Positions 864-52,139 are shown, counted from the stretch's first letter. The stretch is DNA of 64,000 bases from Mytilus californianus (GCF_021869535.1 NW_026262723.1:47678001-47742000); one strand, 5' to 3'. Notes: generated by a model from the sequence alone, not told the origin. A program made the numbers and translations.

Positions 864-1800
864 TGTCAGAACTAATCTTAATCATTATAACGGAAAATTT
901 TCCTTGTCATAAAACGTATCTTTACAATAACAATTAAAGGCCCTGTTGCTGCAACTTAAGTACATTCTTATGTAAGATGACGGAAAATCATCGCGCAAAG
1001 TTAACAAATGAAAACAAAATGATACCAATATCCTTATGTTACGTGTTTCTGTCGTTATCAGGTCAGATCGAAACCAAACCAAACCAAACCAAATAGATAT
1101 AAGAAATGTATGAACACCAAAACATAAGGGAATGCATGTAAACAAGCAAAAAGTCTAATAATCACTGACAACATTGTCTAATAAGTTGGAGCAGCCTGAA
1201 GGGAAAACAAATTCATAAATAGTCCTTATTTGTGCAGAAAAATACTCAGAGTAATGTAATTTTTCGTGTGTTTTTGGTTTCTGACTCATTGACATATATA
1301 CGGCTGATATCTTCTATAATTTTACATTAATAACTGCATGCAGTGCCACTTGTTTTAAATTATAATGTGTCGATTACCGCTGAAATCAATCGTATATCTA
1401 AAAATCCTGTCTATCACTATAGTAAATTCGGACCATACTAAATGTATACATGTCTGTTAATTGTATATGCTTTTGCAAACTATAATTTCTAGTCCACGGA
1501 CATTCCACTTAAAAAGGTACGTAAAAGATGGGAATTTGTATAGAATATATTCTTCTCTTTTGGCAAACGAAAATATTAATAACATGTGAGATAAGATAAA
1601 AAGGGGATAAAAAAAACATATATATCGAAGAGTGACAGACAACATCATGGTTAAAAGGAGAAAAGACAAAAAGAAAAACACAAGTCAAACCTACACACAT
1701 ACCAAGTTGTGCTTATTTTGTGCGTGATTTCCTCTCCTCATATTTGAAGTAGAGCATACAAGTATTAACATATCATTAAATTTATAAAAAAAGTACTTAC

Positions 1801-2166
1801 ATATGATACCATAGGAAGATTGAATGAAGAAGCTATCCTCCCTTCGTGTATACATGTTTCCTGAGGTCCAATATAAACAGAAATATTATATTTCAACAGT
1901 TCCACTGTTTGCCGAATACTTTCCTTTTCACTTCCATAAGTTTCTGCAGATATGAAAACTAGTTTATGATTTGGTAATATGGTCGAGTCTGAATTAATTT
2001 CGTCCAATGCAAAAGTTAAAGCACCTGATATAGATTGGCCAGGGCGTTGGTAGTATTTACCTAATTGTTCCGATCCCGTTAAATATCCTAAACGGATAAC
2101 GTTACTTCCAGAAGTAAATGTCACAAATCCATAACACATCACCACAAAACAAATAAAATTTATCAT
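1801..2166 (-). CDS. Gyc76C: First coding exon (122 codons) of a receptor-type guanylate cyclase, Gyc76C-like: signal peptide plus start of the ANF-receptor ligand-binding domain
   Basis: MINFICFVVMCYGFVTFTSG hydrophobic leader, then LGYLTGS..YQRPGQSISGALTFALDEIN..AETYGSEKESIRQT..YIGPQETCIHEGRIASSFNLPMVSY, which matches my recollection of Gyc76C-type receptors. Phase-0 donor TAT|GTAAGT at 1801/1800; in-frame stops TAA TGA upstream of the ATG. The next exon was not found in 1-1800. Confidence 0.85.
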
Positions 2167-2230: not shown

Positions 2231-3570
2231 ATAAATATAAACTTATTCACGCCACATTCATGCATGCATATTGAGTAATTATCAAAGACGCAGAAAAATT
2301 TGCCGCCCCGATAATTTGTTTCTGTGGCGAATATAACTATAATGACTACTTTTAACGTCCTCTGAGAAAAGCAAACGAAGTCAGCATCACTGATGCAGGA
2401 GATTATATAGACTATCGAGTTAACGTGAACTTTGATTTTTCACAAATGGCAAATTAAATTACTATTTTTTCTCCAACAGAGGATAAAGTAAATGATCCGA
2501 AGTATTAGTTGTTTGATAACTTTGTTTTCTCATAGAAATTAATTAGCTGTTAAACTGTTATATCTGAAACGTTCAAAAATAGAAACAAAATTAAATAGAT
2601 TTGTTTTCATAAGTCACTTAACACACGGAGTGTAGATACAGTTTAATTAACTTTCCAGAGAACTTTCCTGGCTTTATCACTGAGAAATCACTGAGATATA
2701 TTTAAGCTCCCAGTATGCAGTTACATTTTCGATGTTGCTCTCCAAGACTTTGAAGATAAAAACTCGCAGCATAAAATTACCTCCTGTTAATTTTATTTCC
2801 TAGTAAGACTTAAAACTATCATTCATTGATAGCTTGTAATTAGTTGACAGTTCTAAAATCCCTCTCTTGTTGAAAATAGAGCTAAACTATGTTTTATATC
2901 GAAAGTAAATCAAACACCGACGGATTGTATCATATTAAGCATGTTACTGAATTTGAATATCATGACAATTATTCGGTTTTTATATGGAGGTATGAAAATG
3001 CGATGCATTACATCTTCGCGCATGACCATTTCATTTGCGCATAAAAAATCCTTAAGTTTGCAGCTTTAGAATACATTTGCGCGCATTCATTTTAAGGTAA
3101 ACACAGGTTATTTTACAAGTACCTTTTCCATTACTGTAAAAAGTCCCTTGCTCACCAACGAGCATGTGGTAGGGGGATTTTAAGCTGGATTATAGCACAA
3201 CAACCAGGGACAGACCCAGGCTCCTAGGGAAGGAAGGCGTTATAGTCCTTATTAGTAATTAGCAGTAAAACATCTTCCGAGCTGGCGTGGCAAATATTTA
3301 TGACGATTTTATGAAATTAAACATTGATATATTTTTCCGGTCAAAAACAGGTGGTGGGTAAGCCCCATGAATCTACCACTGACAATAAATCTTTACAAAT
3401 TTTATGCATCCATAGCGCTTATTGGATTATCCGTAACTATTGTTTGTCTTTGTAAAAATGGCGAGCGAAGCACATAAGGAATATTATGGGGCCAGAATAT
3501 TTATTTTAATGCGTTATAAGGCAAGATTATCTAATTTAAGTAAATGGGGACTAGAACATTTATTTCCAAA

Positions 3571-4118: not shown

Positions 4119-4413
4119 TATATATTTGTGTCTGTCCCAAGTCAGGAGCCTGTATGTCAGTGCTTGTCGTTTGTTGCTATATATCACATTTGGTTTTTTT
4201 TTCTTTTTCGTTTATTGTTTTGTACATAAATCCGGTCGTTTGTTTTCTCGTTTGAATTGTTTTACATTTGTCATTTTTGTAGCTTAATATGCGGTATGGG
4301 TTTTGTTGAAGGCCGTATGGTGACCAAAAGTTGTTAACTTCTACGTCATTTGGACTCTGATGGAGAGTTGTCTTTTAAAATGGAAATCATACCACATCTT
4401 CTTGTTTTTTTAT
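4119..4413 (+). mobile_element. Family B short repeat, 5'-truncated inside its twister-like motif
   Basis: CTGTCCCAAGTCAGGAGCCTG ... GAAGGCCGTATGGTGACC ... GGAGAGTTGTC ... CATACCACATCTTC, shared with 48149-48435. Confidence 0.8.
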
Positions 4414-5214
4414 ATAAAATATCAAATCTTAACACAAAACGGTGAAACTATTAGCAACTGTTAGACATGGTGCAATTCTAATTGTAATTGAAGTTGTAAA
4501 TGTAACAATGTTTTTGATGGATTAATGATCACTTAGAATGAAAGCAAATCATATTGTGGTTTTAGTAAGCATGTTTAACTCTTCTTTGAATAACGTAATA
4601 GTATGAATAAAGCTTAAGTTATGCAATTTGTTGATGTTAGCTTGAAATAAAAGTAAACTTTATAGCATATGTACATTGTAGGTCTGGAGGAATTTATTAT
4701 TATGATTGAAGTTTGCAGTTGCGTTTTACAAGTGCTCATATCTTTAAACAACCTGTTGTTCGTTTGCTGAAAGTTGCTTGTTTTGAGGTGAAACTTGAAT
4801 GAGAAACATTATGGAAGCACTACGGCTAATCTCCTGTTTTTGTTTTTTTTTTTGGTGTGTGGAGTTTGTGTTGCTCAATCATAAGACTTCTATGTAGTGT
4901 TTAATTGATAGTTATTTTTTATTTGTATTGTCGTCTTATATCACTTGGTCGTGGTGGTTTTTTTTCCTTTAACATGTTATTTTTAATTTGCCTGTTGGTA
5001 TTTTTTTTCGCATCTTGTGTAACAGGTTAAAATTCCATATTTTGATTGGCTAATACAAGGGTGTTAATTTACTCTATTACCCTTCATGGAGACGCTTGAT
5101 CAAGTGTGCGCTTTAATAAATACGGATGGTTGTTATGTACAAGACGTCATAGTTTATTACTTTGAATTTGAAATTTAATCGACAGTAATAACAGAACATT
5201 CAGTATAATAAATA

Positions 5215-6554: not shown

Positions 6555-7087
6555 AAAAGCGAGTCGAAAGATACCAAAGGGACATTCAAACTCATAAATC
6601 CAAAATAAACTGACAACACCAGGGCTAAAAAAGAAAAAAAGACAAACAGACAAACAATAGTACACAAAACACAATATACAAAACTAAAGACTGAGCAACA
6701 CGAATCCCACCAAAAACTGGGGTTGAACTCAGGTGCTCTGGAAGGGTGAGCAGATCCTGCTCCACATATGGCACCCGTCGTGTTGCTCATCTTAGTACAA
6801 ATCCGTTGATAAGTCTAATTCGGTAGGTCACATTCGGGGAAAGGGGACGGGATTGTTGTTACGACAACTGGAACACATCCGTTGTCATGTGTGAAACGGA
6901 TATTCCATAACGGTCAACCAACTCGTGATGGCGTCCGTACAATTTACGGAGGAACGATTTCAACTTCACCACTTGGAACTCTTGGTTTAATAGCTTCCTT
7001 GTGAGCAGCAACCAACACTCTATCAAGGAAATCATGATAGGAAATACAAGCCTTGGAATATCGTATCAACTTGGAGATATACACTCC
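6555..7087 (-). mobile_element. 5'-truncated Penelope-like element, family A (RT C-terminus plus 3' UTR)
   Basis: Frameshifted YISxLIRYSxACISYHDFLDR...KFYGRHHELVDRYGI; collinear with 51605-52136. Confidence 0.85.
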
Positions 7088-10820: not shown

Positions 10821-12199
10821 ATACAATGGTACCTGATCAGATTTATAAGAGCATCTTATTTTCACTGTCAACTCAACGATTCACTTCCATGTTTTCAAAA
10901 GTACAAAAAGAAATGCTACTTTTTGATTAATATTACATTATTAGTGTCAATGAAATGTATAAAAAATCAAGCTGTTTGTCGATTATTCGGTTGAATGTGA
11001 CAAATTACTTCTATAATATTGAACTCTTTTGTGACCTTGCTATAGAAAAGTCAGACAGACGTAATAAAGGTCATTCTAGGTTTTAATATTGTTATAAATC
11101 CTAATGTCATTGTATTGCTATGTTTAACTTACCAACCATACAGTGATGTACACATGTGTATAAAGATACAGTACTTTTCAAAAGAAAAAAAAAAAAGAGC
11201 ATTCCTTTGCACACTCGATTTACATTTTACGTTTAATGAAAATACGTAAGACCTAAACTTGAAAAAAGAGTTCCAGGATTTATCATTATGACTAAAATGT
11301 GACAATTCACATCAATCTAGATAGAATAAATTATGAGTAGAAAAAAAAATTTTCCTTGCATTTTAAAAAATTATTTAAAAAGAAATCTACAAATAAACAT
11401 TTAGGGACTGATCATTTGTAACCTGAAAAAGGGGGGAGGGGTGGGGGGGTTGGAGGAAAATAAGGGGGGCCTTGACAATTTTTTGGAATGGAAATTTCAA
11501 ATTTTCAATACTTCAGATGGGGGGGCATCGAAAATGTTTTTACTATATTTGAGAAGCTATGTATTTCAAACATGCAAAAACGATAGCTAATTTGAAGAAT
11601 ACTCTAAATCAGTACCTGCTTATTCATGATAGTTTGTCTAACACTTGATTCAGATGTCATATATATATTTATTGTGTCTTAATTTTTGGCTTCAAACTTC
11701 ATTTCAATGTTTTATTCGTGTGAGTCATCACCATCTTCTGTTTGTTTGTTGGACATGAAGAAAGACACTAATAGGGAATAAAAATTTGATGTTTTTGCAA
11801 GTTTTCTAGAAGGGTTTCTTAATATTTCATCCCTTTCCATATAATAAAAACACTAATAATATTAATAATGGTTTCTTACATGATTAATCGTAAAACTCAT
11901 CATTGAGCATATATTTCAATGATTCAAGATGATATCTAGGAGCCAAGTGTGGAATTTTTAATATGTCTTTATATGAATAATTTTTCGTCATGACATGGAG
12001 AAGTGGATTAATAAAAAAAATTGACAGGAAAATTAAGACATTGTTAAGATAAAATTCCCAAGGTTCAACATTCAAGGACCGTATAAAGAATAATTTTCTA
12101 ACTTCTTAACAAAAAAAAAATAGGAACAATGTGCTGAAATTGAGTGAAGGTGTGATAAATGTCAGTGAGACCATAACGGGCATATCTAAATAAAATTTC

Positions 12200-12665
12200 T
12201 ACATGTGCCTGTCCCAAGTCAGGAGCCTATTATTGAGTGGTTGTTGTTTATTGCTGTTTCTCATATTTGTATTAAGTTTATTGTCTTGTATAGTTTGTTC
12301 TTGTGTTGTGCTGTTGCACCATTGTCCCAGTTTAGGAGAGAGTTGGCGGCTTCAAACATGTTTAGCCTCGCCACATTCTTTATGTGCCTGTCCCAAGTTA
12401 AGAGCCTGTAGTTCAGTGGTTGTCGATGGTTCATGTCTGTCATATTAGTTTTTCGTTAATTTTTTTTTTATTATAAAATAGGCCGTTAGTTTTCTCAATT
12501 GATTATTTCACATCTTTTTTTTTATATCAGGCTGTTTTATAGCCAACTTTATGGTATTGGTTTTTCTCGTTGTTGAAGGCCGTACTGTTGTCTATTATAA
12601 TTGCTTACATCCACTTCATTTGAAATTTGGTGGATAGGTTTCTAATTGGCAATCATACATACTAC
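12200..12665 (+). mobile_element. Family B repeat: partial unit followed by a second unit, twister motif degenerate
   Basis: GTGCCTGTCCCAAGT at ~12204 and ~12384; the second motif has GAGAG, TAG and a broken P4. Confidence 0.8.
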
Positions 12666-15047: not shown

Positions 15048-15689
15048 ATATATTACATACTTGTAACATATATTTTGATACTTTGAATACCATAGACTAT
15101 CATTTTTTCTGATATTGGACGATTTTTGTATGCACCCATATAGCATTAGCTAGGACAAAGAAAGCCTCTAATAAACCTTCTAAAAGTTCCGAATAACGTT
15201 TGAACCCCAAATACACATACAAATACACAGTCACAGACATAAACACAAACTCACAAAATAACATGCCATGTTAGTTTTTCAAACAAGACTACGCTTCGTC
15301 GAAAGAATTTTAAAACCAGACAATTACAAACAGGACAAAATGCTGATAACTGAGTGATAACCAAAAATAAAGCTACATCATGTAATCTCTAAACAAGTGT
15401 AAATTATATTTCAATATGAACATTCACCCAATGAATTATTTACCTTGAAAATAACAATTTAAAAATTTGAAAGTCAGGGATATATAAGTAAATTATTTTC
15501 ATTTACCTGTGTTTAAAGTAATTGCAAATGGCTGATATTTTTGTTCGAGCATATTATTTTTCTTAAATTGTTTAACATTTCATAGCAGTTTAACATGTTA
15601 CTTTTATTATTCTTCCCTTAGTTTATTTATTTTGTATTTACATTGTATCATAGGTCAAATTTATTTGTTCAGTGTATGTTCACTGGTGT

Positions 15690-16098
15690 TGATATGTCCT
15701 TTGATTGAGTTAAGTCATTTCAATTGAAATTTTATAGTGTGACTTTCTATGTTGTGATGTTACACTATTGTTTCAGAAAAAGGGTGAAGGTTTGGTACCA
15801 TTAAAACGTTTAAACCCGCTACAATTGTTTGCACCTGTCCTAAGTCAGGAATCTGATGTTCAGTAGTTGTCGTTTGTTGATGTTGTTCATAAATGTTTTT
15901 CGTTTCTCGTTTTTTATATAGATTAGACCGTTGGTTTTCCCGTTTGGATGGTTTTACACTAGTAATTTTTGGGGCCCTTTATAGCTTGGCTCCGTGTTGA
16001 AGACCGTACTTTGACCTATAATGGTTTACTTTTATAAATTTTGACTTGGACGGAGAGTTGTCTCATTGGCACTCATACCACATCTTCTTATATCTATT
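15690..16098 (+). mobile_element. Family B variant (B')
   Basis: Same architecture as family B with a diverged sequence; ends CATACCACATCTTCTTATATCTA. Confidence 0.8.
15773..15856 (+). ncRNA. Twister-like ribozyme (type P5), core apparently intact
   Basis: P5 TCAGA/TCTGA; P2 ACCC/GGGT; L1 GAAGG; TAA; T1 GC/GT; P4 CCTG/CAGG; L4 TCCTAAGT; T2 CCT/AGG; predicted cut at 15811/15812. Confidence 0.75.
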
Positions 16099-16575: not shown

Positions 16576-18301
16576 GGTACTACTTCGAAAAAGAAGTACA
16601 TAAAGGTAACCGTACATATATAAAAGATTTGAAAATTTACTTACTGTTATGTTATTATTTGTTTGTATTAGAAAAACAACTTAAAATATTTTCCAACTTT
16701 AAAGCCTTCTTTGTAGAAGTGGTAATAACGGTTTTTACAATGCATTAATTCCAAGTAAAATGGAAAAGAATCAGTTTGTGGTTTTAACCGTTAAATGAAT
16801 GTTTGATATCTTCTCCAAATCACTCAATTGTATAAATGATCAAAGTTATGAAACGAATTATGATAACATGAATCTTAGAGTAACTTTATTGGCAATTTAG
16901 TTATAAAGTGGTTTCTTGCTTTGAATGTTTGTTGCAAATGTGATGTTTTATATTCAGTTCTGGTGTGTTTTATAACCATAAGAATATTAAAAATGTTATA
17001 GTTTTATGTCCACGGTGATCATTGAATTTCCACATTCATTGTTTTAAAGTATTTCATGGAAAACTATTGTAAATATTGCAACTATTTAAAACTATTTAAA
17101 AAAGAATGAATTCAATCCTCCGAGAGAATCAGTGCTTGATTTTATATGAGGTTCAGTTATATTTCATAACTAACCAAAGGCAGTAACCCAAATATGTAAA
17201 AAAAACCAAACAACGTAAGGACAATTAAGCTAATAGCTATTATTTATGCTTCAGGTTTTTTTTATAAGCGACATTTTACTTCAAATCTATATATTACACC
17301 TATATCTATTTGAAATATGTAAGAAGATGACAATCCCTTTCTTCTTGATTAAGTACAAGCGTTAGCTTCACAATTAGCCTCGTGTCTTTGATGAAATTTA
17401 AAATAACAAAAATACCGAACTCCAAGGAAAATTCAAAACGGAAAGTCCTTTATAAAATGGTAAAATCAAAAGCTCAAACACATCAAACAAATGGAAAACA
17501 ACTGTCATATTCCTGACTTGGCACAGGCATTTACTTATGTAGAAAATGGTGGATCAAACCTAGTTTTTAAAGTTAGCTAAATACTCACTTGTATGACAGT
17601 CGCATAGAATTCTATTATATTGACAACAATGTGTGAGCAAAACAAACAGACATAATAGGTAAAAATGTCAAAAATTGGGGTTCAGCAGTCAACATTGTAA
17701 TATAATCTTAATCACTATAAAACAAATAACTATTTCAACAAAGAAAAACAAAATGGCATATAGACAAAGTACATAAGCAAAAATGAAAGACAAGAATATA
17801 AAATTGACCATAGCACAATCACACAATGGCGGGATGTATAACTACCGAGCCACGCCAAAAGAATATTACAAAAATGGACTAAACAGTAAAGGTTAAAATT
17901 GTACAAGGACAAATAAAAGAAACACTATAACACGTAATTAAAATGATAAACAACGTCTGTATCTCGAATCTATACTTCAAGACCATCATGTATTATTTGT
18001 GAAGTTGATACGGAATATTTATCAACAATGTCTTGGTATCTTCCAATGAACTTTTTTTTAGAAAAAAGGACGACACGTTCTTTGACATAACCTTGGCTTA
18101 CAACTTTCTGCTCTGACACTGGTGACGTTTTATAAGGTCTGAATAGCAGCTGCAAGCTCTTGAATACCGAATAAATTGGGGAATGTATAGCCCATATGCA
18201 GGTGAAGTTGGTATGTTGCTGCTAGTTGGGGAAATTTATAATTTCAAAATCAAAATCGTCTCGTTTGTCGTAGATTCTGGTACTGAGATTCCCGCTTATG
18301 T

Positions 18302-18600
18302 CAATAAACTCATCATAGATACCAGGATTGAAATTTTATATTTACGCCAGACGCGCGTTTCGTCTACAAAAAACTCATCAGTGACGCTCGAATCAAAAAA
18401 TATTAAAAAGGCCAAATAAAGTACGAAGTTGAAGAGCATTGAGGACCAAAAATTCCTAAAAGTTTTGCCAAATACAGCTAAGGTAATTTATTCCTGAGGT
18501 AGAAAAGCCTTAGTATTTCAAAGTTTTTTTAACAGTTAATTTATATTATGAACATATCAATGATAACTCAAGTCAACACAGAAGTGCTGACTACTGGGCT
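18302..18600 (-). mobile_element. Non-LTR retrozyme-like repeat carrying a hammerhead ribozyme
   Basis: Same family as 18875-19365, 34225-34700 and 35565-35852. Confidence 0.85.
18343..18390 (-). ncRNA. Minimal type I hammerhead ribozyme, intact core
   Basis: CGTCA-CTGATGA-GTT-TTTTGTA-GAC-GAAA-C-GCGC-GTC|TGGCG; stem I CGTCA/TGGCG; palindromic stem III; cut at 18350/18349. Confidence 0.88.
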
Positions 18601-18874
18601 CAAATTCGAGGTTTAAGTTTAAAATTGAGGCAGAGGAAACCGTGTATGTTGTTTCTTAAATTACTAGTTCTGGAGGATATATTAATGGAACCCATTCAGA
18701 AAAATTTGGATTGTTAACGGAAAGAACATCATCAGTATATCTGGCTTTTTTTATCGTCTTGTTTTTGACAAGTATCTGAAGGAACCCCGACTCATATGAA
18801 AATAAGAAGAGGTCCTCATATGAAAATAAGAATAGGTCGGCAAGGAGAGGCGCACACTTCGTTCCCATAGGAAT

Positions 18875-19365
18875 GATGAGTTTTTTTTTACAACCACTGC
18901 GTCGATGCCACTGCTTGTAGAGGTTTCCTCTCCGAAGGTATCACCAGCCCAGTAGTCAGCACTTTTGTTTTGATATGAATTATCATTGGTATTGTCATAT
19001 TTATAAATTAACTGTTCACAAAATTTGAATTGTACGGAAAACGCATGATTTTCTACCTTAGGAATAGATTATCTTAGCTGTATTTAACAAAACCTTTCGG
19101 AATTTTTGGTCCTAAATGCTCTTTAACTTCGTACTTTAATTGGCCTTTTAATTTTTTTGATTCGAGCGTTACTTATGAGTCTCTTGTAGACGAAACGCGC
19201 GTCTAGACTTGTATCTTTGATGAGTTTCTTTTACAATCACTGAGTCGATGCCTCTGCTGGTGGAAGTTTCCACCTGGAGTGTATCACCAGGTAATTTTTC
19301 AGCACTTCTGTTTATCATTTATCATTAATATTGTCATATTTGTAAATTAACGAACACAAATTCAC
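18875..19365 (+). mobile_element. Retrozyme-like repeat, about 1.4 head-to-tail monomers (344 nt period)
   Basis: GATGAGTTT recurs at 18875 and 19219; hammerhead at ~19165-19206 with CTTATGA (core G mutated). Confidence 0.85.
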
Positions 19366-22174: not shown

Positions 22175-22560
22175 ATATAAATAAGAAGATGTGGTATGAG
22201 GGCCAATGAGACAACTCTACATCAAAGTCACAATGTATAAAAAGTAAACAATTATAGGTCGAAGTACGGCCTTCAACACGGAGCCTTGGCTCACACCGAA
22301 CAGCAAGCTATAAAGAACCACAAAATTACTAATGTAAAAAAAATCAAACAGGAAAACCAACGGTCTAATCTATATAAAAAAACGAGAAACGAGAAACATT
22401 TATGAACCACACCAACAAACGACAACCACTGAACAACAGGACTTTGGACAGGTGCATAAAAATGCAGCGGGTTAAAACGTTTTACCAGCCGCCAACCTTC
22501 ACCCTAACCTGAGACAGTAGTGTAACATTACAACATACAAAGACACACTAAAAATGATCA
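22175..22560 (-). mobile_element. Family B' repeat, twister motif degenerate
   Basis: Minus strand GGGTGAAGG...AAAACGTTTTAACCCGCTGCATTTTTATGCACCTGTCCAAAGT. Confidence 0.8.
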
Positions 22561-22899
22561 ATTGAAATGATTATTTCAATTCGCATATTCGTTATTAGTC
22601 AAATAATTTGACAAATATTAAATATTACAGGGGGTTTCGCTGTCAAATTAGTGTTCGCCGATGTGACTCAAAATCTCATATTTGTTTCATAGCATACTAA
22701 CAGTTTATCAAAATTATAAAAACTCATAAAGAAACAATAAACAATGCATGGACTCGTTATGATGGATCAGCATGTGATGTGTGTTTTTGCACAGACGTCA
22801 TCTTACTAACCATCGAGATGACCTCCGAAGAATGCCGATTGTCATACGCCACGATGTTAACATAAACATAAATATAAATACACTTACAACATTGTGCAA

Positions 22900-28805: not shown

Positions 28806-29100
28806 ATAAAATTGAGAATGGAAATTGGGAATGTGTCAAAGAGACAACAACCCGACCAAAGAGCAGAAAACAGCCGAAGGCCACCAATGGGTCTTCAACA
28901 CATCGAGAAAATCCTGCACTCGGAGGTGGCCTACAGCTGGCTCCTAAATAAAAATGTGTACTAGTTCAGTAAAAATGGACGTCACACTAAACTCCAAACC
29001 TTTTAAATGAACTAAAATTAAAAAACATACAAGACAAACAAAGGCCAGTGGCTCCTGACTTTGGACAGGCGCAAAAATGCGGCGGGGTTAAACATGTTTT
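28806..29100 (-). mobile_element. Family F 3' region, truncated within the twister motif
   Basis: Minus strand begins AAAACATGTTTAACCCCGCCGCATTTTTGCGCCTGTCCAAAGTCAGGAGCC. Confidence 0.85.
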
Positions 29101-29536
29101 GTAAATGCATGAGTTACATCCAAAAATGAATAACATGTTTTCATATGCTATTAGATAAGTGATGTGAGCCCATTTCCGTACATCTCCTTACACATTGTAA
29201 ATGTTATATTTAGGTAAAAACAGTGTTAATCGCGAATCGAAAATTACTATAATTATGACTATGATTCACCAAAAGTTTGAGGTCGAACATTTATTTTTAG
29301 GATGAGATCTTTTTTAAAAACTAAGTATACGTATAACGATTATATTTAGTTCAGAAATGTACTTTGCTTTGTATATACACAACTCTATACCTGTAATCAA
29401 ATATTTATGTTTAAATGTTCATCATTTTTTTTTGTATCCCTTTACTGATTTTTTCAGTGTGAATATGATCTTTAATATTCGATGTTTCATGCAGCTTCTT
29501 TTACTTTACTCCAGATATCATCAACATAATATTATT

Positions 29537-43310: not shown

Positions 43311-43730
43311 AAAAATAAGGAGATGAGGTATGATTGCCAATGAGACAACTTCCCACCAAAGTTCAAATAGAGTAGATGTACATGTAAGCAATTAAAGGCA
43401 ACCGTACGGCCTTCAACAGTGAGAAAAACCCATACCGTATAGTCGGTTATAAAAAAAGGCCCCGACATGAAAAATATGAAACAATTCAATTGAGAAAACT
43501 AACGACCTAATTTATAACAAAACAATTAACGAAAAAAATATGACAGACATGAACCAACGACAACCACTGAACTACAGGATCCTGACTTGGGACGGGCACA
43601 TAAAGAATATGGCTGGGTTAAACATGTTTGTGAGCGCTCAACCCTCCCCCTTACCTTGGACAGTGGTGTAACAGCACAAAATAAGAACAAACTATGAAAA
43701 AAGGCTTAACTCATCAGATCGATACAAAGA
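43311..43730 (-). mobile_element. Family B copy
   Basis: Reverse complement of 48050-48435. Confidence 0.85.
43575..43657 (-). ncRNA. Twister-like ribozyme (family B), single mismatches in P2 and P4
   Basis: GGGG-GAGGG-T-TGAGCGCTCA-C-AAACATGTT-TAA-CCCA-GC-CATAT/ATGTG-CCCG-TCCCAAGT-CAGG. Confidence 0.6.
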
Positions 43731-44179
43731 GAAAAACATCAAACATAAACACAGACCGGACGAAGCATGGTTCATTTTCATGAATTGACGATAAAAACGA
43801 CTTATTTTGACGAATCAGGGTAACTGTTTTCAGATAACGGTAACGCTAATTTGTATGAGACCTCTAATGATTTACAATAAGGATATTTTGATGAATCACG
43901 ATTAAAATTTGACGCTAACAATACCAGAACATTACCGTTTGACGCCTGACAGTAAAAATTACTGTTTCTTCTTAAAACAAAGGAGATGGAAGACATCAAG
44001 GGCAAAACGAAAACTACAAAAAGACGAACAAGTCCTAAAACACTACACAGAAAACTATAGTTTGAGCAACACGGAGAAATGCCAAAACTGAAAAATTGTC
44101 ATATCGCTAATAAGTTAAATGAGATAAATGATTAAAAGGGTAGGGATGTAAAGGACGTAAAAACTCAGTGTATGATTAT

Positions 44180-45255
44180 AAATAACAAAAATACTGAACT
44201 ACAAGGCAAATTCAAAAAGGGGGAATCTGGGAAAACTGACAAAATCAAACGCTATCAATCAATGGAACAAGTGCAAAACAACTGCCATCTTCCTGACTTG
44301 GCACAGGCATTTTCCGAAGAAAATGGTGGGTTAAACCTGGTTTAATAGCTAGCTAAACCTTCCACTTGTATGACAATTGTCTATAGTTCCGTTATATTGA
44401 CAAAATTGGGTGAGCAACCCAAACAGACATAATAAATTAATGTGACTATAATTGGGATCCAGCAGCCTAGACTGTGTAAACATACACCACAGACATACGA
44501 CACAACGGAATAAAAAAATTCAAACAAACATACAAATAACAAAGAAGACAACAAAAAAAGGTGTTTTAGTAGATAATAAACTTGACAAAGACGCCGACAA
44601 AAATGTTTTTCACGTTTACAGTAAATTGAACAAGACGCCAATAACGTAAGTTTTTGTCGTTGATAGTACATACCGTATAATAGTATAAACTTTCTCGATA
44701 AAGTAGAAATTAGATAAAATATAAATCCAAGGGTACACAAAATAGGAAAACACACTGTAAAAAACTACTTGTGTCCGAATCGTACTTCAGGTCCCACCTG
44801 CACCAGGAACGCCCAAAGTAAAAAATCCGATGACAGGATGCATAAATACTGAGTCACGTCAAAAGTCATACGACCAAGAGAAAAAGAATAGCACGAAGAC
44901 ACATAACGGAAAAACTAAAGTAAAATAGAAAGATACACAACTTTAGCACTTAGAATTTATCACTCAAGACCATGTTGTATTATTTGTGAAGTAGACACTG
45001 AATGTTTATCTATAAGGTCTTGGTACTTTTCGATGAACTTTTTGTTTTGTTTTTTACAAGTGTCTAAAGAAACTCCGACTCATATGGAAATAAGAAAAGC
45101 TCGGCCAGGAGAGGTGCACAGTTGGTTCCCATAGGAATGCCAACAACTTCTGTAAATTACTACCTCCAAATTCAACAAATATGTTGTCAATGATAAACTC
45201 CAGCATACTGATCACTTGTTCTTCGGTGTAGCATGTTTTATTTTCGGACACACCC
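44180..45255 (-). mobile_element. PLE family C: internally deleted RT remnant plus full 3' UTR with a twister-like motif at 44280-44380
   Basis: EQVISMLEFIIDNIFVEFGG..GIPMGTNCAPLLA.LFLFPYESEFL, then KKFIEKYQDLIDKHSVSTSQII; twister P3 CATTTTC-TTCG-GAAAATG. Confidence 0.85.
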
Positions 45256-45467
45256 TAATAAAATATGTAGAATTATATCACAAAACAATACATTTGTAGC
45301 GTATGGTACCATTTTTTATTGAGGAAAATATTGTGGATTATTGTTTTAAGACGGGTTTGAATTTATCATGTGGTATGATGGTGTAAAGGGTGCGGAAATC
45401 GTTCTATTAAGATATGATATGAACCAAACGTATTAAAAGCCAGTAACATGCCAAAAAACGGTAATGG

Positions 45468-45848
45468 TTCATCGCTCGTGTATGTAACAACGTATTTGAT
45501 TTCAACGAAAGAAATCTCTGTATTACGGAAAAATTATTACACCAGGGTTTTCGATATCACAAACTAGTCAAAACATTTACTAAATTTTATCATCGGTACA
45601 AGAACATCATTCGTAAATATAAATCAACATGCAGACATCTTATACGTTCAGGTATTTCACATCCAATATTTTATGGTAATATTCTTTACAAAACACAAAA
45701 ATGTCGGCATTCACCTCAAAAGCTAACTAAACCTTTAAACAGACTTATTTGGAAAGGATATAGTTACGATACTGTTGTCAAGTCATTAAGGATTGCATAT
45801 TTTGGTATTAATATTGATTCACTCATAGGGTCTTTGCATCGGAAATAA
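45468..45848 (+). mobile_element. Uninterrupted 126-codon C-terminal frame of a PLE RT protein (family F), missed by the ORF track because it has no start codon
   Basis: FIARVCNNVFDFNERNLCITEKLLHQGFRYHKLVKTFTKFYHRYKNIIRKYKSTCRHLIRSGISHPIFYGNILYK...GSLHRK*; first half parallels RYSRAC..KLL.QG....KL..KFY.RY in families A and C. Confidence 0.8.
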
Positions 45849-46492
45849 ACACATTTATTATATAACCAGTTGTTGGCATGATACGGGTTATGTTCTTCTC
45901 ATATATTTTATGATGGTATGATACTAAACCCCTAACGGGAGGAGATGTACTTGATTTTCATATGATGAAGACATAATCTTTCAATCAGTTTAATTGAGGT
46001 CTGGAGCTGGCATGTCAGTAACTGCTAGTAGTCCTTTGTTCATTTATGTATCATTGTCATTTTGCTTAGTTTCTTTTGTTACCTATTGTGGCATCGGACT
46101 CGGACTTCTTTTAAACTGAATTTTAACTGTGCGTATTGCTATGTGTTTCTTTATTCTACATTGTCTAGAGGTATAGGTGGAGGGTTGAGATCTCACAAAA
46201 CATGTTTAACCCCGCCGCATTTTTGCGCCTGTCCCAAGTCAGGAGCCCCTGGCATTTGTTAGTCTTATATGTTTTTTAATTTTAGTTTATTTAAATGTTT
46301 TGGAGTTTAGTGTGACGTCCATTTTCACTGAACTAGTACACAATTTTATTTAGGGGCCAGCTAAGGACCACCTCCGGATGCGGGCTTTTCTCGCTGCGTT
46401 GAAGAACCATTGGTGGCCTTCGGCTGTTGTCTGCTCTTTGGTCGGGTTGTTGTCTCTTTGTCATATTCCCCATTTCCGTTCTCAATTTTATT
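45849..46492 (+). mobile_element. 3' UTR / terminal repeat region of the family F PLE
   Basis: Contiguous with the ORF; distal 300 nt match the solo copies at 14903, 28806 and 33241. Confidence 0.8.
46165..46252 (+). ncRNA. Twister-like ribozyme (type P5, family F), all core nucleotides present
   Basis: P5 CTAGAGGT/GCCCCTGG (1 mismatch); P2 CCCC/GGTG (1 mismatch); GAGGG; TAA; GC; P3 CGCA-TTTT-TGCG; P4 CCTG/CAGG; L4 TCCCAAGT; cut at 46207/46208. Confidence 0.75.
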
Positions 46493-47904
46493 AGCAATAG
46501 TGAACATGCAAAATTTATGACAGAGTTAAACATTTTACGTATACGATAAAAAATAACCTAGATACCGATGTTGATGAACCAATTCTGATGTGAAACATGT
46601 ATTTTAATTAGGTTTTAACCATAAATTACAATAATCATATATGTACCATGTAGTGATTAGGCAGAATGATGCACTAAATGACTGCTTTGTTATGAAATCT
46701 ACAAGACAGAAAACGTAGGACTAAATAAGCTCTTACGAAGCAATGTATTGTCTGATTGAATGAATGTATAACAGATTAACGAAGACTTTTTCAGGAAGTT
46801 GTACTGATGGAAGTTTCGTGTTGAACAAGAACAATACAAAATACTATCATGGATTATAATTAATAAACTCAAACGAAATAGATACACAATGTAAAATCAG
46901 GGCACTTTCACAAACACGATGACAGTATTTGTTTGATAATTCCGTACAATGTAAACCTTCAGTTGAAATTAGAAATTGAAATATTATAGACATTAAGGTA
47001 TTAGATATCTTATAGATTGTTTGATCTATGCAATTCATTTTTATAGTCTTATGGGCTTTTTTAAATTGATTTATGCTGTTTCGTTATTTCGACGTTATTT
47101 TCCTGTTCATCCTTTATTGAGACTTTTGGTTGATGTTTTTTGTTAATGGTCAATATATGTTGTCTTTTTTTTTTAAATCTAATTTTCAGCGTTTATCTTA
47201 TTTTTGAATAACAACACTGCTTACTAATGGGTATCGCATATGCCCAGAATTTTGAGTTAAATAAGAAAAGAATGTGAAAACTGAAAAGTGAACAAGGGAG
47301 CCAGCAGGACTCGTTCCGTTGACTGATTAAGGATCTTAAAAATCGTTCTTATACTAATAAGTCGATGATTTACATATGTTTTTTTTAAATCTATACCATG
47401 AAGTCAAACAGATTTAGGAAATTCGTTATTTTACTATAGAACGTGTTTTTCTGTCTATTTAATCTTTCCACCTTTCCATGGATACCTTTTGATTTTTTCT
47501 GACTATATATTTTTTCTTCAACTACTTTTGCTTCTAGGATGTCGCTCTTGTTTTGCAACATGTCGATAAGATATTTGGTATATGATATCGAACAGTAATT
47601 GCGCTTTTGAAACTCATCCTTTTTAAATCAAACTCTATTCCGTATTTGGGTAATCTGGGTTTTTTTGTTGTTATCGCTTCTCCTCAGAATGCGTAATTTT
47701 TTTTTCTCCAAAATGTTCTTTACTTCAATAGGATGATCTGATAAATTTGGACCGAATTGGTACGATCACAAGTATTTCCCTTTTTGTGTTCACATAAGTG
47801 ATATGCTGAAGTAACTCATAAATCATAAGTCATATAGACTATTAGTTATTGGCTTTGAACTAGTTGTCAGTAACTGCGAGTACTCTCAGATCTTAGTCGT
47901 ACTT

Positions 47905-48435
47905 TGACCTATAATTGTTTACTTTTTACACATTGTTACTTGGATGGAGAGCTGTCTCATTGGCACTGATACCACATCTTCTTATTTATATCTAGGGTCT
48001 TTTTGTTGTGGGAATGTATAAGTACCCTGCCACGTCCACTCTGTGTTTTTGTTAGATGTATTTCTACTTTGTATCGATCTAATGAGTTAAGCCCTTTTCA
48101 ACTGATTTTTATAGTTTGTTCTTATGTTGTACTGTTACACCATGGTCCCAGGTTAGGGAGAGGGTTGGCGCGCCTTCAAACAAGTTTAACCCGCCACATT
48201 CTGTATGTGTCTGTCCCAAGTCAGGAGCCTGTAATTCGGTAGTTGTCGTTTGTTGCGTATGAATCGTTTTACATTTGTCATTTCGGGGCCTTTTAAAGCT
48301 GACTATGCGGTATGGGTTTTACTCATTGTTGAAGGCCGTACGGTGACCTATTATAGTTGTTTATTTCTGTGCCATTTGGTCTGTTGTGGAGAGTTGTCTC
48401 ATTGGCATTCATACCACATCTTCTTATTCTTATAT
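47905..48435 (+). mobile_element. Family B: a B' 3' end followed head-to-tail by a full unit
   Basis: CCACATCTTCTTATT ends at ~47988 and ~48430. Confidence 0.85.
48149..48231 (+). ncRNA. Twister-like ribozyme (family B), near intact
   Basis: P5 CAGGT/GCCTG; GGGA-GAGGG; TAA-CCC-GC; P3 CACAT/ATGTG; P4 TCTG/CAGG; L4 TCCCAAGT; cut at 48187/48188. Confidence 0.7.
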
Positions 48436-51400
48436 TAAAGTCTTTTGATATGTGGTCCTTAAGTAGGAATTTTTTACCTTTGATTGTTATCGCAACTCCT
48501 CTTTTTCTCCCCTCAAATTTTCAAAATAAGTTCTTTGGTAGGATAACTTCTTATTATACATATTAGAGACTTGAAGTCTTTTGATTTGAAATCATTGATC
48601 TTTGAACGTAAAAATTGAGGTCAAAGGTAAATTTAACGTTCTATATTTTGACCTTTACTATGACTTCATACTTGTACACGATAAACCCATAAGGTCTTTT
48701 GTATGAGATGGGATGGAATATGCCCTTATAGTCAACAGCAAGTGAAATGGTGTAAACAGGAAGAAGCCTTTTTATCTAAATTTATGTTGAAGTACCTAGA
48801 AACTTTATATTTTTAGAACGAATGTGAAGTATTCTATCATATGAGCAGGAAGTGGTATTTTTTTAAACAAGAAGTAGAAAATGGTGTCCCTTAATATTTC
48901 AAGCAACAGCATATATAAACGATAAATTGTTCGAATCTGTGTAAGGATGCTATATATTGTTACGTATAAAATACTAAACTGAAAGAAGCTACTAAGGGAA
49001 ACCCCTTTTTATTTACATAATTGGTGAAAAAAAAAGTATCATGTTTTTTTTTGGTATTTGATAGTAAAAATTAGTTAGTTAGCTTTCAATTAAAACAGGT
49101 TGAATGACCAAATGAATTTTCAAATAAACAGATATACTTGTTTTAAGGGGAGACAGCACTGTAAATTTCCTGTTTTTGGAAGTGAAAATTGACAACTTAT
49201 TTGTGGCTATTGTTGTTCTTTCCGGAGAAGGCGACTAAAACTAATAGTGAAGGAAGGTTTTTTTTAAAAGACCAGGTATAGTTTTATGAAGTTCATACAA
49301 TTTTGATTAACTGAAATGTGCCTTTTTTATTATGTTAAAATTACACTTAACTATTATTTCATTATAAACTAGAGCAATTTCTAATACCACCACTAAGAGT
49401 CACTTGTGCATGGTCCCTCAAAATATGACGTCATAGAAAAAACTGTTGATCGCACTCTTATGTAAGCTATCATATTACATCGAAAGTAAAATTTTGAAGG
49501 CCGGAAGTAACTCTTTCCATTATTACAAATGGAAACACATAGAAACAATATTGTTTTGGAATCAGTGAAAAGTGAGCTATCGTACAAACCGGAAGTGACA
49601 TTTTGTAAACAGGAAGTAACAAATGATCTCCCTTATTTCAAGCAAAAGTAAATACAAACAAGCTATCATATGACACCAAAACTGACATTTGGTAGACCGG
49701 AAGTCGCAAACTATATACCTTGTTTCAAAGGGAAATACAGAGAAACCTAATAGTTTTGAAATCACAGAAAAGTTGGCTATAAGTTGACACTCAAAGTGAC
49801 TTTTGGAACCGGAAGGAAGAGATCATCTTGCTTAATGCAAAGAAAGAACAAAAAAGTATATACTTTTTGGAATCTGTGCAAGATAAGTTATTTTCCCACA
49901 GCATTTCTTTTTAAAACGAAGACTACTTTTTGTAATTAATTTTCTTTCACATATCTGAATAAAAGATCATGTAATTTAAAACCTCAATTATCAAACTGGG
50001 AGTTGGAAAGACCTTGTATTTATTTTTATATTTTTATCGGGTCATACGATTATCGGTAGGCAGTCTCCGGATGTCATCTCGGTGATTCACTAGATGGGAC
50101 CTATTTTTCTAATGTAAACGGTTAATTAGTAGATTTTATTGCTAAAGATATAAAAAAGGAGATATTGGACATTTTATAAGGTCTGATATCAAACGCAACA
50201 TACAAACAACGAGTCTTTCTTAAGTCAGTAGTCAACTTTGATCAATTTTATTTCTCCCGTAAAAAAAAGAAAACTTCATATATCTCATTGAGTGAATTAA
50301 AGATTACGTTTGAAATGTTATCATTTAATGCATGAAAAAGTAAAACAAACAAAAGTGACACGATAAAAGAAGGAGACAAATGCACTCAACTAGTACAGGT
50401 GGTCTATTTACATTAAAAACTGTATTCTTAGAAAAAGGGACAACCGTTTGCTGTTCTGTGAAGAGGGGACATGAGGGTTTTCCCGCACAAGCTTTTATCA
50501 ATAATAATCAAAAATCAATAAATCTTAAACTTGAATCTTGAAAATATTGTGGGAAGATAGTTTAATCTATTTTTGTCTGGTAATTTATTTTTAAAAATGA
50601 TTTTTTCCCATGCTATCTCCCTTCACAGAATATCAAATTGTCTCATTACACATGTAATTGTAAATTTGCACTTACCTTATTTTTCAGTGTATGTCTTCCA
50701 ATACTATACATTTGTATCTGTAAAATTAATTATATGCACATACATTTTTACAATCGAACCAAACTTAACTGGCCAAAAGAAACATGCGTTGTACAATGTA
50801 TATAATAGAAAAACAAAGGCTAATATAAACATGTCAATAGTACGCATTTTTTAATAAATGTGGCTTTACATGTTTTTTTCGAGATATTTAAATCAATAAT
50901 CTGACTTGACGTATTTAGAATACAAGTAAAGTTGAATTATTTACACTGAAAATATAAGAAAGCTTACGAATAATCATCAGCAAATGTTAGGACTATACCT
51001 TGTAGATGCCCTAAATGTTGATTTTATCGGGTTTTAAAATAACCTGAAAGCCTAAAAAAAATATTGGAAACCTAACTTGTATGAATAAACTGGTGATTTA
51101 CGCCATTATAGCTGTCTTGTAACTGATACTAATTGCATCACAAAACAGGGAATGGTTCTAGAGCATATTTCGAATTAACTTCGTTTACAGGCGTTGCAAA
51201 GCCTTAGTGACCCCATGGTTTTCAAAGTAGGTTGTTTTAAAGCAGCCCAGTCAGTGGATGCCACGAACATATGTTTACTTTATATAATCAGTCAATGAAA
51301 ATCAACATATAAAATGTTTTGCAATAAATAGAATGGTCAATTTCCATAGGCTTTGAAAAGGTTCTGATTTTGACTATTTTCAAGTCATTTGCAATTTGCT

Positions 51401-51604: not shown

Positions 51605-52136
51605 AAGGGGCTAAAAGATGGACGAAAGATACCAGAGGGACAGTCAAACTCATAGATCGAAAACAAACTGACAACGCCATGGCCAAAAATAAAAAGACAA
51701 ACAGACAAATAATAGTACAGATGACACAACATAGAAAACTAAAGACCAAGCAACACGAACCCCACCAAAAACTGGGGGTGATCTCAGGTGCTCCTGAAGG
51801 GTAAGCAGATTCTGCTCCACATGTGGCACCCGTCGTGTTGCTTATGTTATTACAAATCCGGTAAATAGTCTCATTCAGTAGGTCACATTCGTGAAAAGGG
51901 AAGGGTATTGTAGTTACGACATAAGGAACATATCCGATATCATCTGTGAAACGGTTATTCCATAACGGTCAACCAACTCGTGATGGCGTCCGTAAAATTT
52001 ACGAAGGGATGATTTCAACTTCACCATTTGGAACTCTTGGTTTAATAGCTTCCTTGTGAGCAGCAATCCTCTATCAAGGAAATCATGATAGGAAATATAA
52101 GCCCGGGAATATCGTATCAATTAGGAGATATATATA
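51605..52136 (-). mobile_element. Young 5'-truncated PLE family A copy
   Basis: ORF 51914-52120 IRYSRAYISYHDFLDRGLLLTRKLLNQEFQMVKLKSSLRKFYGRHHELVDRYG...LMS*. Confidence 0.9.
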
Positions 52137-52139
52137 CTA

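What the first reader, a model, noticed from the sequence alone, without database searches (positions are those of the whole stretch)
45468..46492. Penelope-like element whose 3' UTR carries a twister-type ribozyme rather than a hammerhead
Seen: an open PLE RT C-terminal frame (45468-45848) runs into a 3' UTR containing P5-GGTG-GAGGG ... TAA-CCCC-GC-P3-CCTG-TCCCAAGT-CAGG-A-P5' (46165-46252). The same layout (RT stop, then twister motif, then fixed 3' end) recurs in a different PLE lineage at 17395-18875 and 44180-45255. Established: the twister core is UAA, P2, T1 GC, P4, L4 UCCCAAGC and L1 GAGGG, and P5 circular permutations exist; PLE terminal repeats are classically associated with hammerheads. 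Inference: these PLE lineages use twister for RNA end processing. I am not aware of this being described for bivalves but cannot check the literature.
Basis: partly seen in the sequence, partly recalled or inferred. Interest (0 to 1): 0.9.

Follow-up and report, generated by a model that had tools for sequence, protein, structure and literature searches.

The report
Twister-fold RNA in Naiad retroelement tail
The flagged stretch is a worn, front-truncated copy of a Naiad-type Penelope-like jumping gene, a group reported to lack ribozymes, whose tail holds an RNA with the full twister-ribozyme fold, a pairing conserved across many lineages, though cutting itself is not shown.

Summary
45465-45848 is the open C-terminal end of a retroelement reverse transcriptase. 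46163-46254 carries a circularly permuted (type-P5) twister layout, and the layout recurs at 17509-17590(-) and 44289-44367(-).

The element belongs to the Naiad clade of Penelope-like elements. Full-length relatives have an N-terminal GIY-YIG-type nuclease motif, CxC and DKA motifs, four in-frame UGA codons and a SECIS. That clade is published as lacking hammerheads.

The fold is real. In 30 distinct sequences fetched through the protein, not the RNA, 92% of cells pair and 15 of 17 pairs show compensatory changes. This includes both pseudoknots, which the search model did not contain. The motif lies on the ORF strand about 316 nt after the stop in 36 of 37 loci that have it.

Three things weaken the ribozyme reading:
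- Rfam twister models score only 13-23 bits (gathering score 37.6).
- P1 is replaced by two palindromes.
- RNA reads show no pile-up of ends at the predicted cut, 46207/46208.

This copy also has four broken helix pairs. Self-cleavage is therefore plausible but unproven.

No paper I could search links twister to Penelope-like elements. The scan reached the same reading on other pieces of this genome (s1-302467, s1-328130, s1-307172).

The parts
45465..45848 (+). C-terminal 127 codons plus TAA stop of a Naiad-type PLE reverse transcriptase. The copy is 5'-truncated at about 45470.
   Evidence: Translation. tblastn 68% identity to P0009, E 6.6e-52. Homologues listed. Full-length relatives L008-L010.
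45900..45964 (+). SECIS-like element, 52 nt after the stop.
   Evidence: Rfam SECIS_1 scores 25.3 bits here. The same position scores 28.0 bits in L002 and 32.3 bits in L008. The gathering score is 35.
46163..46171 (+). P5 5' strand. Position 46164 is mismatched in this copy.
   Evidence: It pairs with 46246-46254. The read majority has G at 46164. The intact sister copy L008 folds with this helix.
46176..46184 (+). P2 3' strand (GGTG) and L1 GAGGG, which includes the presumed catalytic G 46180 and the T1 partners 46182-46184.
   Evidence: Rfam Twister-P5 alignment. Covariation counts. 46178 T>G in the read majority.
46186..46207 (+). Two palindromes, TGAGATCTCA and AAACATGTTT, in the place of stem P1.
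   Evidence: Palindromic bases average 13.9 of 27 against 2.9 in shuffles over 18 copies. Twenty-three different perfect first palindromes occur among 47 sequences.
46207..46209 (+). U^AA, the predicted scissile site between 46207 and 46208.
   Evidence: Position in the Twister-P5 alignment. The cleavage rule is from PMC8501958. No read-end pile-up is seen here.
46210..46243 (+). P2 5' strand CCCC, T2 partner GC, P3 hairpin, and P4 with loop L4 TCCCAAGT.
   Evidence: CM R1 hit 46174-46246, 77.8 bits. Pair counts.
46246..46254 (+). P5 3' strand. Positions 46248 and 46254 are mismatched in this copy.
   Evidence: Read majority 46248 C>T and 46254 A>C. P5 duplex statistics in sister lineages.
46255..46492 (+). 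Remaining 3' tail of the element, up to its fixed 3' end.
   Evidence: Reads diverge after 46492 in all four runs (table 7). Homologous tails occur in L002 and L003.
44289..45469 (-). Second Naiad lineage, head-to-head with the first: an internally deleted RT remnant (45049-45469) and a twister-fold motif (44289-44367).
   Evidence: tblastn. CM R1 79.9 bits.
17509..18874 (-). Another copy of that lineage: RT remnant 17883-18874 and a degenerate motif at 17509-17590.
   Evidence: tblastn. CM R1 52.2 bits.

Best explanation
The region is the 5'-truncated, decayed 3' part of a selenoprotein-encoding Naiad Penelope-like retroelement. Its order is RT C-terminus, stop, SECIS, then about 310 nt on a circularly permuted (type-P5) twister-fold RNA domain, then a tail of about 240 nt to a fixed 3' end.

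The twister domain is a conserved module of Naiad 3' UTRs. Helices P2, P3, P4 and P5 and both pseudoknots T1 and T2 are kept by compensatory change, and the loop nucleotides that form the twister active site stay fixed.

Most likely (inferred, not shown) intact copies are slow or conditional self-cleaving ribozymes. They would cut between U and AA, which is 46207/46208 here, and take the role that minimal hammerheads have in canonical Penelope-like elements, namely processing read-through or partial-tandem transcripts. Stem P1 is replaced by two self-complementary segments, so activity may need two copies to pair.

The copy in the window has four broken helix pairs and is probably inactive.
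For: Identity of the element:
- The window ORF matches the RT C-terminus family.
- Full-length relatives L008-L010 carry an N-terminal IIY..YVGETGR nuclease motif, a KR-rich block, a CxC (SCNCS) motif, PADKAANN (DKA), no C-terminal nuclease, and four in-frame TGA codons at shared positions.
- These features match the Naiad diagnostics in PMC8557442.

Fold:
- A2: 86.6% paired, covariation 0.390 against 0.211 in shuffles, 0 of 500 shuffles as high.
- A3: 86.8% paired, 11 pairs with changes on both sides.
- A6, an independent set of 30 distinct sequences found through the protein: 92.4% paired against 71.5% shuffled and at most 39% when partners are slid. Fifteen of 17 pairs carry compensatory changes. 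T1 and T2 were not in the search model.
- P5 forms long, lineage-specific helices: 0 of 500 shuffles reach the observed energy in L002, L004, L006, L007a and w32829, and 1-7 of 500 in six other copies.
- Twister-P5 is the only Rfam hit on 46140-46280 (17.3 bits, E 0.11) and the best of two hits in L022 (23.1 bits, E 0.0034).

Association:
- 37 strong CM hits in 80 protein-fetched loci, all on the ORF strand and 36 downstream, with a median offset of 316 nt.
- 28 of 36 loci with at least 600 nt of room downstream carry the motif.

P1 is not essential. P1-relaxed twister variants cleave in vitro, and inefficient cleavage occurs without P1 (PMC8501958).

Dimer. Cofolding natural copies favours a dimer by 8-11 kcal/mol.
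Against: - No self-cleavage is demonstrated. Four RNA-seq runs span 46207/46208 and the equivalent site of the copy at 48154-48228, and no read starts or ends reach a fifth of the local depth (table 6).
- The five window or locus copies truncated inside the motif start at other positions, none at A+1.
- Rfam scores stay below the gathering score. Scans of 400 nt or more give no twister hit, and neither does the 161-nt scan around the 15780-15852 copy.
- There is no P1 helix.
- Minimum-free-energy z-scores are unremarkable, -0.07 to -1.6.
- Cutting at this site would separate the ORF and SECIS from the 3' end needed for reverse transcription, so efficient cleavage would be self-defeating.
- A large sub-family keeps a U-U mismatch in the third T1 pair.
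Confidence: 0.6

Rival explanations
1. The domain has the twister fold but is not catalytic in Naiads. It would serve as a structured recognition, dimerisation or packaging element that the Naiad RT binds near the 3' end of its template.
For: - No read-end pile-up at the predicted site.
- No genomic copy starts at A+1.
- P1 is absent in all lineages.
- Rfam scores are sub-threshold.
- The distance to the stop and to the 3' end is fixed, as expected of a template-recognition module.
- Abundant 5'-truncated copies all keep the domain, so uncleaved RNA is the template.
Against: Loop nucleotides that base pairing does not require stay fixed while every helix sequence turns over. These are the GA of L1, U-AA, the AA of L4 and the A after P4. 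They are the positions that make the twister active site. P1-less twister variants can still cleave (PMC8501958).
Confidence: 0.3
2. The short twister-bearing repeats are independent non-autonomous elements (SINE- or retrozyme-like) that form small circular RNAs. The ORF-linked copies would then be secondary.
For: Motif copies occur in partial tandem: 12140-12226 and 12332-12405, and L007 4035-4110 and 4352-4427. Animal hammerhead retrozymes have been proposed to derive from PLE pseudo-LTRs (bioRxiv 10.64898/2026.07.22.740005).
Against: In L022 the commonest short repeat of the window follows directly on a Naiad ORF stop. The short repeats are therefore 5'-truncated Naiad tails. No circular-junction reads specific to the cleavage site were seen; the joints link different families. 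Partial tandems are the normal Penelope-like insertion structure (PMC8557442).
Confidence: 0.07
3. The match is a chance resemblance: a conserved repeat core that happens to spell twister loops, with no RNA structure behind it.
For: Rfam gathering-threshold scans find nothing, and thermodynamic z-scores are weak.
Against: Fifteen of 17 pairs carry compensatory changes in an independent set, and pairing drops from 92% to under 40% when partners are slid by one column. All 37 motif hits lie on the ORF strand.
Confidence: 0.03

Closest known systems
Type-P5 twister ribozyme (Rfam RF02684, clan CL00120)
   Same: Same order of elements. P2, P3, P4 and P5 are present, and so are both pseudoknots. 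The loops are L1 GAGGG, U^AA and L4 UCCCAAG(C/U), with an A after P4. The full-length model alignment covers positions 1-58.
   Different: P1 is missing and replaced by two palindromes. The last L4 base is usually U or G, with the T2 partner changed to match. Scores are 13-23 bits, below the gathering score of 37.6. Cleavage has not been shown.
Twister T-variants at the 5' end of Perere-3/RTE non-LTR retrotransposons in Schistosoma mansoni (PMC8501958; also noted in PMC7761336)
   Same: A twister core with a relaxed or absent P1 is embedded in a retrotransposon and present in very many copies.
   Different: There the ribozyme sits at the 5' end, frees the element from upstream transcript and borrows its P1 strand from the target-site duplication. 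Here it lies in the 3' UTR, about 316 nt after the stop, in a different retroelement class.
Minimal type I hammerheads in the pseudo-LTRs of canonical Penelope-like elements, which cleave as dimers (Cervera and de la Pena 2014; Lunse et al. 2017, as cited in PMC6765202)
   Same: A small self-cleaving motif sits in the terminal or 3' region of a Penelope-like element. One stem is crippled and self-complementary sequence suggests action in pairs.
   Different: The ribozyme class is different. The Naiad clade was reported to have no canonical hammerhead (PMC8557442).
Selenoprotein-encoding Naiad elements of clams and spiders (Craig et al. 2021, PMC8557442)
   Same: N-terminal GIY-YIG-type nuclease, CxC and DKA motifs, three or four in-frame UGA codons at cysteine positions, a SECIS shortly after the stop, and heavy 5' truncation.
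   Different: That paper reports no ribozyme and does not mention twister. The SECIS here starts about 52 nt after the stop, against 1-21 nt there.

Membership tests
Twister ribozyme | Helices P2 and P4 flank conserved loops in the canonical order (here the P5-open permutation). | tested here: met
   In A6, P2 is 78-92% paired and P4 98% paired, with compensatory changes. The layout was read directly.
Twister ribozyme | Double pseudoknot: T1 (L1 GGG with L4 CCC) and T2 (L2 GC with the end of L4). | tested here: met
   T1 pair states are GC, AU, UA, UG and GU. T2 pair states are CG 11, GU 5, AU 4 and GC 2. Neither pseudoknot was in the search model. One sub-family keeps a U-U in the third T1 pair.
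Twister ribozyme | Conserved core nucleotides: U-AA at the scissile site, GA(G)GG in L1, the CC.AAG core of L4 and an A after P4. | tested here: met
   Alignments A3 and A6. The first G of L1 is present in nearly all copies. Some lineages have CAA instead of UAA.
Twister ribozyme | Stem P1 next to the cleavage site. | tested here: not met
   The bases after GAGGG and before U^AA are not complementary in any lineage. Two palindromes occupy the space.
Twister ribozyme | Score at or above the Rfam gathering threshold. | tested here: not met
   Twister-P5 scores 17.3 bits and 23.1 bits, and twister-P1 13.3 bits, against 37.6 and 67.2. The whole-window gathering scan finds nothing.
Twister ribozyme | Site-specific self-cleavage. 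| tested here: inconclusive
   RNA reads show no end pile-up at 46207/46208. The reporting threshold is a fifth of the depth, and most reads come from decayed copies inside other transcripts. No biochemical test is possible with these tools.
Naiad clade of Penelope-like elements | The GIY-YIG endonuclease is N-terminal to the RT, and there is no C-terminal nuclease. | tested here: met
   L008-L010 and L016 have IIYLLTuNKPGCGIQYVGETGR..EH upstream of the RT, and the ORF ends about 200 residues after RYLDD. This was judged by motif only. Pfam on the pieces between UGA codons gives no hit.
Naiad clade of Penelope-like elements | CxC motif and a DKA motif in place of DKG. | tested here: met
   SCNCS and PADKAANN in L008-L010, and PADKASNN in L004. 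The criteria are from PMC8557442.
Naiad clade of Penelope-like elements | No canonical hammerhead. | tested here: met
   No hammerhead at gathering score in the window. None at E up to 10 in the 3' UTRs scanned.
Naiad clade of Penelope-like elements | Insertion structure: heavy 5' truncation, partial tandems and an adjacent inverted copy. | tested here: met
   The window holds many tail-only copies. Tandem motifs occur at 12140 and 12332 and in L007. There is a head-to-head junction at 45469/45474, but between two different lineages.
Non-LTR retrozymes (circular-RNA-forming ribozyme repeats) | Unit-length tandem repeats bounded by ribozymes and expressed as circular RNA. | tested here: inconclusive
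   Only partial tandems are seen. No cleavage-site circular junctions appear among the listed joints. The short repeats are ORF-linked tails.

The most novel reading that the evidence does not exclude
Naiad elements carry an obligately paired twister. With P1 replaced by two self-complementary segments, the ribozyme would be silent in a single RNA and would cut only when two copies meet, either as tandem units in one transcript or as two RNAs in a particle. That would mirror the dimer-dependent hammerheads of canonical Penelope-like elements. It would imply that this retroelement class needs a ribozyme gated by RNA pairing, whichever ribozyme class supplies it.
Probability: 0.3. Interest if true: 0.85.

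Novelty: new variant of a known kind. Interest (0 to 1): 0.75.

Why it matters
Penelope-like elements were thought to come in two kinds: those with hammerheads, and the very abundant Naiads without any ribozyme. That contrast was used to argue that the ribozyme might be dispensable or merely parasitic.

A twister fold held at a fixed place in Naiad 3' UTRs would mean the class as a whole keeps a small self-cleaving-type RNA and has swapped one ribozyme class for another. This window alone holds 13 strong CM matches (45-80 bits) in 64 kb, so the full count could be very large and could add a great many twister-like sequences to animal genomes.

It would also give a natural P1-less, palindrome-bearing twister variant on which to test regulated or dimer-dependent catalysis. 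Annotation of bivalve repeats would improve as well, because many 'unknown' short repeats are Naiad tails.

Tried and rejected
- Rfam at gathering score on the whole window gave no hits. E-value scans of 400-800 nt also miss the motif because of the filters. Scans of 131-141 nt show a twister hit. The 161-nt scan around 15780-15852 shows none.
- Pfam, the ESM Atlas and PDB sequence searches on the ORF pieces gave nothing informative. Classification therefore rests on the motif diagnostics of PMC8557442.
- Single-sequence folding gave unremarkable z-scores. Minimum-free-energy folding cannot model pseudoknots.
- I considered a known SINE core domain such as Nin, Meta or MESC. I dropped this because L022 shows the commonest repeat is a Naiad 3' UTR. 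A literal search for the L4/P4 string in papers returned only unrelated primers.
- I considered a DNA-level role for the palindromes. It is not excluded, but 12 of 47 sequences keep self-complementarity only through G-U pairs, which points to RNA.
- Two RT remnants, 6904-7087(-) and 51869-52138(-), have no detectable motif downstream even with filters off. I did not find out why.
- Three contig look-ups returned no DNA.
- The original twister paper (Roth et al. 2014) is not in the library. I could not check whether mollusc examples were in its lists.

Full report
**1. Observation**

The frame 45465-45845 is open and ends in TAA at 45846-45848. Upstream of 45465 the frame is full of stops.

Downstream, the sequence read has the following layout:
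- GGTG-GAGGG at 46176-46184
- two palindromes, TGAGATCTCA at 46186-46195 and AAACATGTTT at 46198-46207
- T^AA, with the predicted cut between 46207 and 46208
- CCCC, then GC, then a small hairpin at 46216-46227
- CCTG-TCCCAAGT-CAGG at 46228-46243, then A
- flanking strands at 46163-46171 and 46246-46254 that can close a P5 helix

The P4/L4 16-mer with up to three mismatches occurs 15 times in the window, against 0.10 expected. The motif therefore belongs to a very abundant repeat.

**2. What the ORF is**

The 127-residue frame matches only unnamed fragments in the large protein collection. A phmmer search with the intact relative P0009 finds 13,477 proteins. Longer members show PKLHK, IPMGTNCAPL, RYLDD and FLDLDI..YDKRDDFxFPIVN.

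L004 has PADKASNN upstream of the RT. Loci L008-L010 were fetched by protein similarity and are 73-75% identical to the query alignment. They hold an ORF of about 1000 codons from the same family as the window copy, with these features:
- an N-terminal IIYLLTuNKPGCGIQYVGETGR..EH nuclease motif
- a KR-rich block
- SCNCS, a CxC motif
- PADKAANN, a DKA motif
- the RT, with no C-terminal nuclease
- in-frame TGA at four shared positions

These are the diagnostics Craig et al. give for the Naiad clade and its selenoprotein-encoding members (PMC8557442).

A SECIS_1 match lies about 52 nt after the stop. It scores 25.3 bits in the window, 28.0 in L002 and 32.3 in L008, against a gathering score of 35. 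Pfam and PDB searches on the pieces gave nothing, so the assignment rests on motifs.

Within the window, tblastn finds five RT remnants. Three of them have the RNA motif downstream on the same strand. The (-) remnant at 45049-45469 abuts the (+) copy at 45474 head-to-head.

**3. Is the RNA fold real?**

Rfam gives nothing at gathering score and nothing in an 801-nt E-value scan. On 141 nt, Twister-P5 is the only hit: 46176-46243, 17.3 bits, E 0.11, model positions 1-58. A cleaner copy, L022, scores 23.1 bits with E 0.0034. L004 gives only a weak twister-P1 hit, and the copy at 15780-15852 gives no twister hit. All of these fall below the gathering score, mainly because the P1 part of the model is skipped.

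The comparative evidence is much stronger.
- Fifteen copies from the window and ENA contigs: 86.6% of cells pair, and covariation is 0.390 against 0.211 in shuffles, with 0 of 500 shuffles as high.
- Seventeen copies including L006 and L007: 86.8% paired, with 11 pairs changed on both sides.
- An independent test followed. I built a covariance model holding only the nested helices P2, P3 and P4. I fetched 80 loci from metagenome contigs using an alignment of the RT C-terminus, not the RNA, and searched them with the model.
- The 30 distinct matches give 92.4% pairing, against 71.5% shuffled and at most 39% when partners are slid. Fifteen of 17 pairs carry compensatory changes, and covariation is 0.530 against 0.160.
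- The two pseudoknots were not in the model, yet they covary. The T2 pair is seen as C-G, G-U, A-U and G-C. The T1 pairs are seen as G-C, A-U, U-A and U-G.

P5 is a long helix of entirely different sequence in each lineage. No shuffle out of 500 reaches the observed energy in L002, L004, L006, L007a and w32829, and only 1-7 of 500 do in six other copies. Single-sequence free-energy z-scores are unremarkable, as expected for a pseudoknotted RNA.

**4. Association with the element**

All 37 strong matches in the 80 loci are on the ORF strand. Thirty-six lie downstream, at a median of 316 nt after the estimated ORF end. The one exception lies 794 nt upstream, as a partial tandem would. Twenty-eight of the 36 loci with at least 600 nt of room downstream carry the motif.

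In L022 the commonest 'short repeat' of the window (copies at 48154, 43578, 12332 and others) follows directly on a Naiad stop codon. The short repeats are therefore 5'-truncated Naiad tails, not separate elements.

**5. State of this copy**

RNA reads from sister copies differ from the window at four positions in more than 95% of reads: 46164 (T to G), 46178 (T to G), 46248 (C to T) and 46254 (A to C). Each of these positions lies in P2 or P5, and the base in the reads is the one that pairs. The window copy therefore has one broken P2 pair and three broken P5 pairs. The natural copy L008:3433-3504 is the intact form.

**6. Does it cut?**

This is not shown. Four RNA-seq runs of the matching species label were laid on 45300-48500. 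They cover the site at a depth of roughly 560-1170 on both strands. No position in either motif copy reaches the tool's criterion for many molecules beginning or ending, which is a fifth of the local depth (table 6).

Copies truncated inside the motif begin at various points, none at A+1. These are 29051-29122(-), L001:1457-1529, and the copies at 12140-12226 and 4119-4146.

Efficient cutting would also separate the ORF and SECIS from the 3' end that primes reverse transcription.

On the other side, the loop nucleotides that make the twister active site stay fixed while every helix turns over. Twister variants with a relaxed or missing P1 still cleave, if less well (PMC8501958). Most reads come from decayed copies inside other transcripts, so a modest cleaved fraction would go unseen.

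**7. The P1 region**

In every lineage the space between GAGGG and U^AA holds two self-complementary segments. Across 18 copies, palindromic bases average 13.9 of 27, against 2.9 in shuffles. Among 47 distinct sequences there are 23 different perfect first palindromes, and 12 cases are self-complementary only through G-U pairs, which points to RNA rather than DNA.

Cofolding two natural copies favours a dimer by 8-11 kcal/mol through the first palindrome, with swapped halves. This is only a nested-structure energy estimate.

A simple two-molecule complex cannot easily form both palindromic duplexes end to end, because the linker is only 1-3 nt. The geometry therefore remains open.

**8. Comparison with what is known**

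Four systems are closest.
- *Type-P5 twister.* It has the same architecture and core, but here P1 is lacking and scores are sub-threshold.
- *Twister T-variants of Perere-3 in Schistosoma.* These also sit in a retrotransposon with a relaxed P1, but at the 5' end of a non-LTR element (PMC8501958; PMC7761336).
- *Minimal dimeric hammerheads of canonical Penelope-like elements.* The host class and the hint of pairing dependence are the same, but the ribozyme class differs (PMC6765202).
- *Selenoprotein Naiads.* This is the same element type, for which no ribozyme was reported (PMC8557442).

Library searches for twister together with Penelope, SINE or mollusc, Mytilus, RTE or bivalve terms found no paper describing this association. 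A November 2026 paper still cites only the Schistosoma case for twister in retrotransposons. The library misses many subscription papers, including the original twister paper.

**9. Earlier notes of this scan**

After reaching the reading above, I found that 119 notes on this genome mention twister. Three follow-ups on other pieces reached the same conclusion.

- the protein-anchored association test
- the pseudoknot covariation on an independent set
- the negative RNA-read test
- the full-length selenoprotein ORF with its SECIS
- the demonstration that the short repeats are Naiad tails

**10. Verdict**

The fold and its link to Naiad elements are well supported, at about 0.9. Catalysis is plausible but unproven, at about 0.6, and this particular copy is probably dead.

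I file it as a new variant of a known kind, with interest 0.75.

Noticed in passing
window 45900-45964; L008:263, 356, 389, 1664 and 3161-3225; L016: This Naiad family looks like a selenoprotein gene. Four in-frame TGA codons sit at shared positions in L008, L009, L010 and L016, in the zinc-finger-like and GIY-YIG region and just after the DKA motif. A SECIS_1 match of 25-32 bits lies about 52 nt after the stop.
   Followed up: partly
window 46186-46207 and the same place in all 47 distinct copies examined: Stem P1 is replaced by two self-complementary segments that covary to stay palindromic. Some keep this only through G-U pairs. Cofolding favours a dimer by 8-11 kcal/mol.
   Followed up: partly
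window 45469/45474: Two Naiad remnants of different lineages meet head-to-head within five bases. This resembles the inverted-copy structure described for Penelope-like insertions, although here the two arms are not the same family.
   Followed up: no
window 47900-48430, 43390-43900, 12080-12600, 22240-22760, 15530-16050: The commonest short repeat of the window is the 3' UTR of another Naiad lineage. In L022:560-1320 it follows an RT stop codon. These repeats are truncated tails, not a separate SINE.
   Followed up: yes
window 12140-12226 and 12332-12405; L007:4035-4110 and 4352-4427: Motif copies occur in partial tandem, about 190 and 317 nt apart, as in Penelope-like pseudo-LTRs.
   Followed up: no
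window 46182-46186 with 46208-46212, and equivalents: GGGUU after L1 is complementary to AACCC at the cleavage site. Minimum-free-energy folds prefer this alternative helix, which could compete with the twister fold.
   Followed up: no
window 6904-7087(-) and 51869-52138(-): Two further Naiad RT remnants have no detectable twister-fold motif downstream, even with search filters off.
   Followed up: partly
window 1765-2166(-): The only ORF above 130 residues in the window. It begins with a hydrophobic stretch that could be a signal peptide. It may be a host exon and was not examined.
   Followed up: no
L002:1893-2574: A tandem array with a period of about 170 nt lies upstream of the Naiad remnant in this contig.
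   Followed up: no
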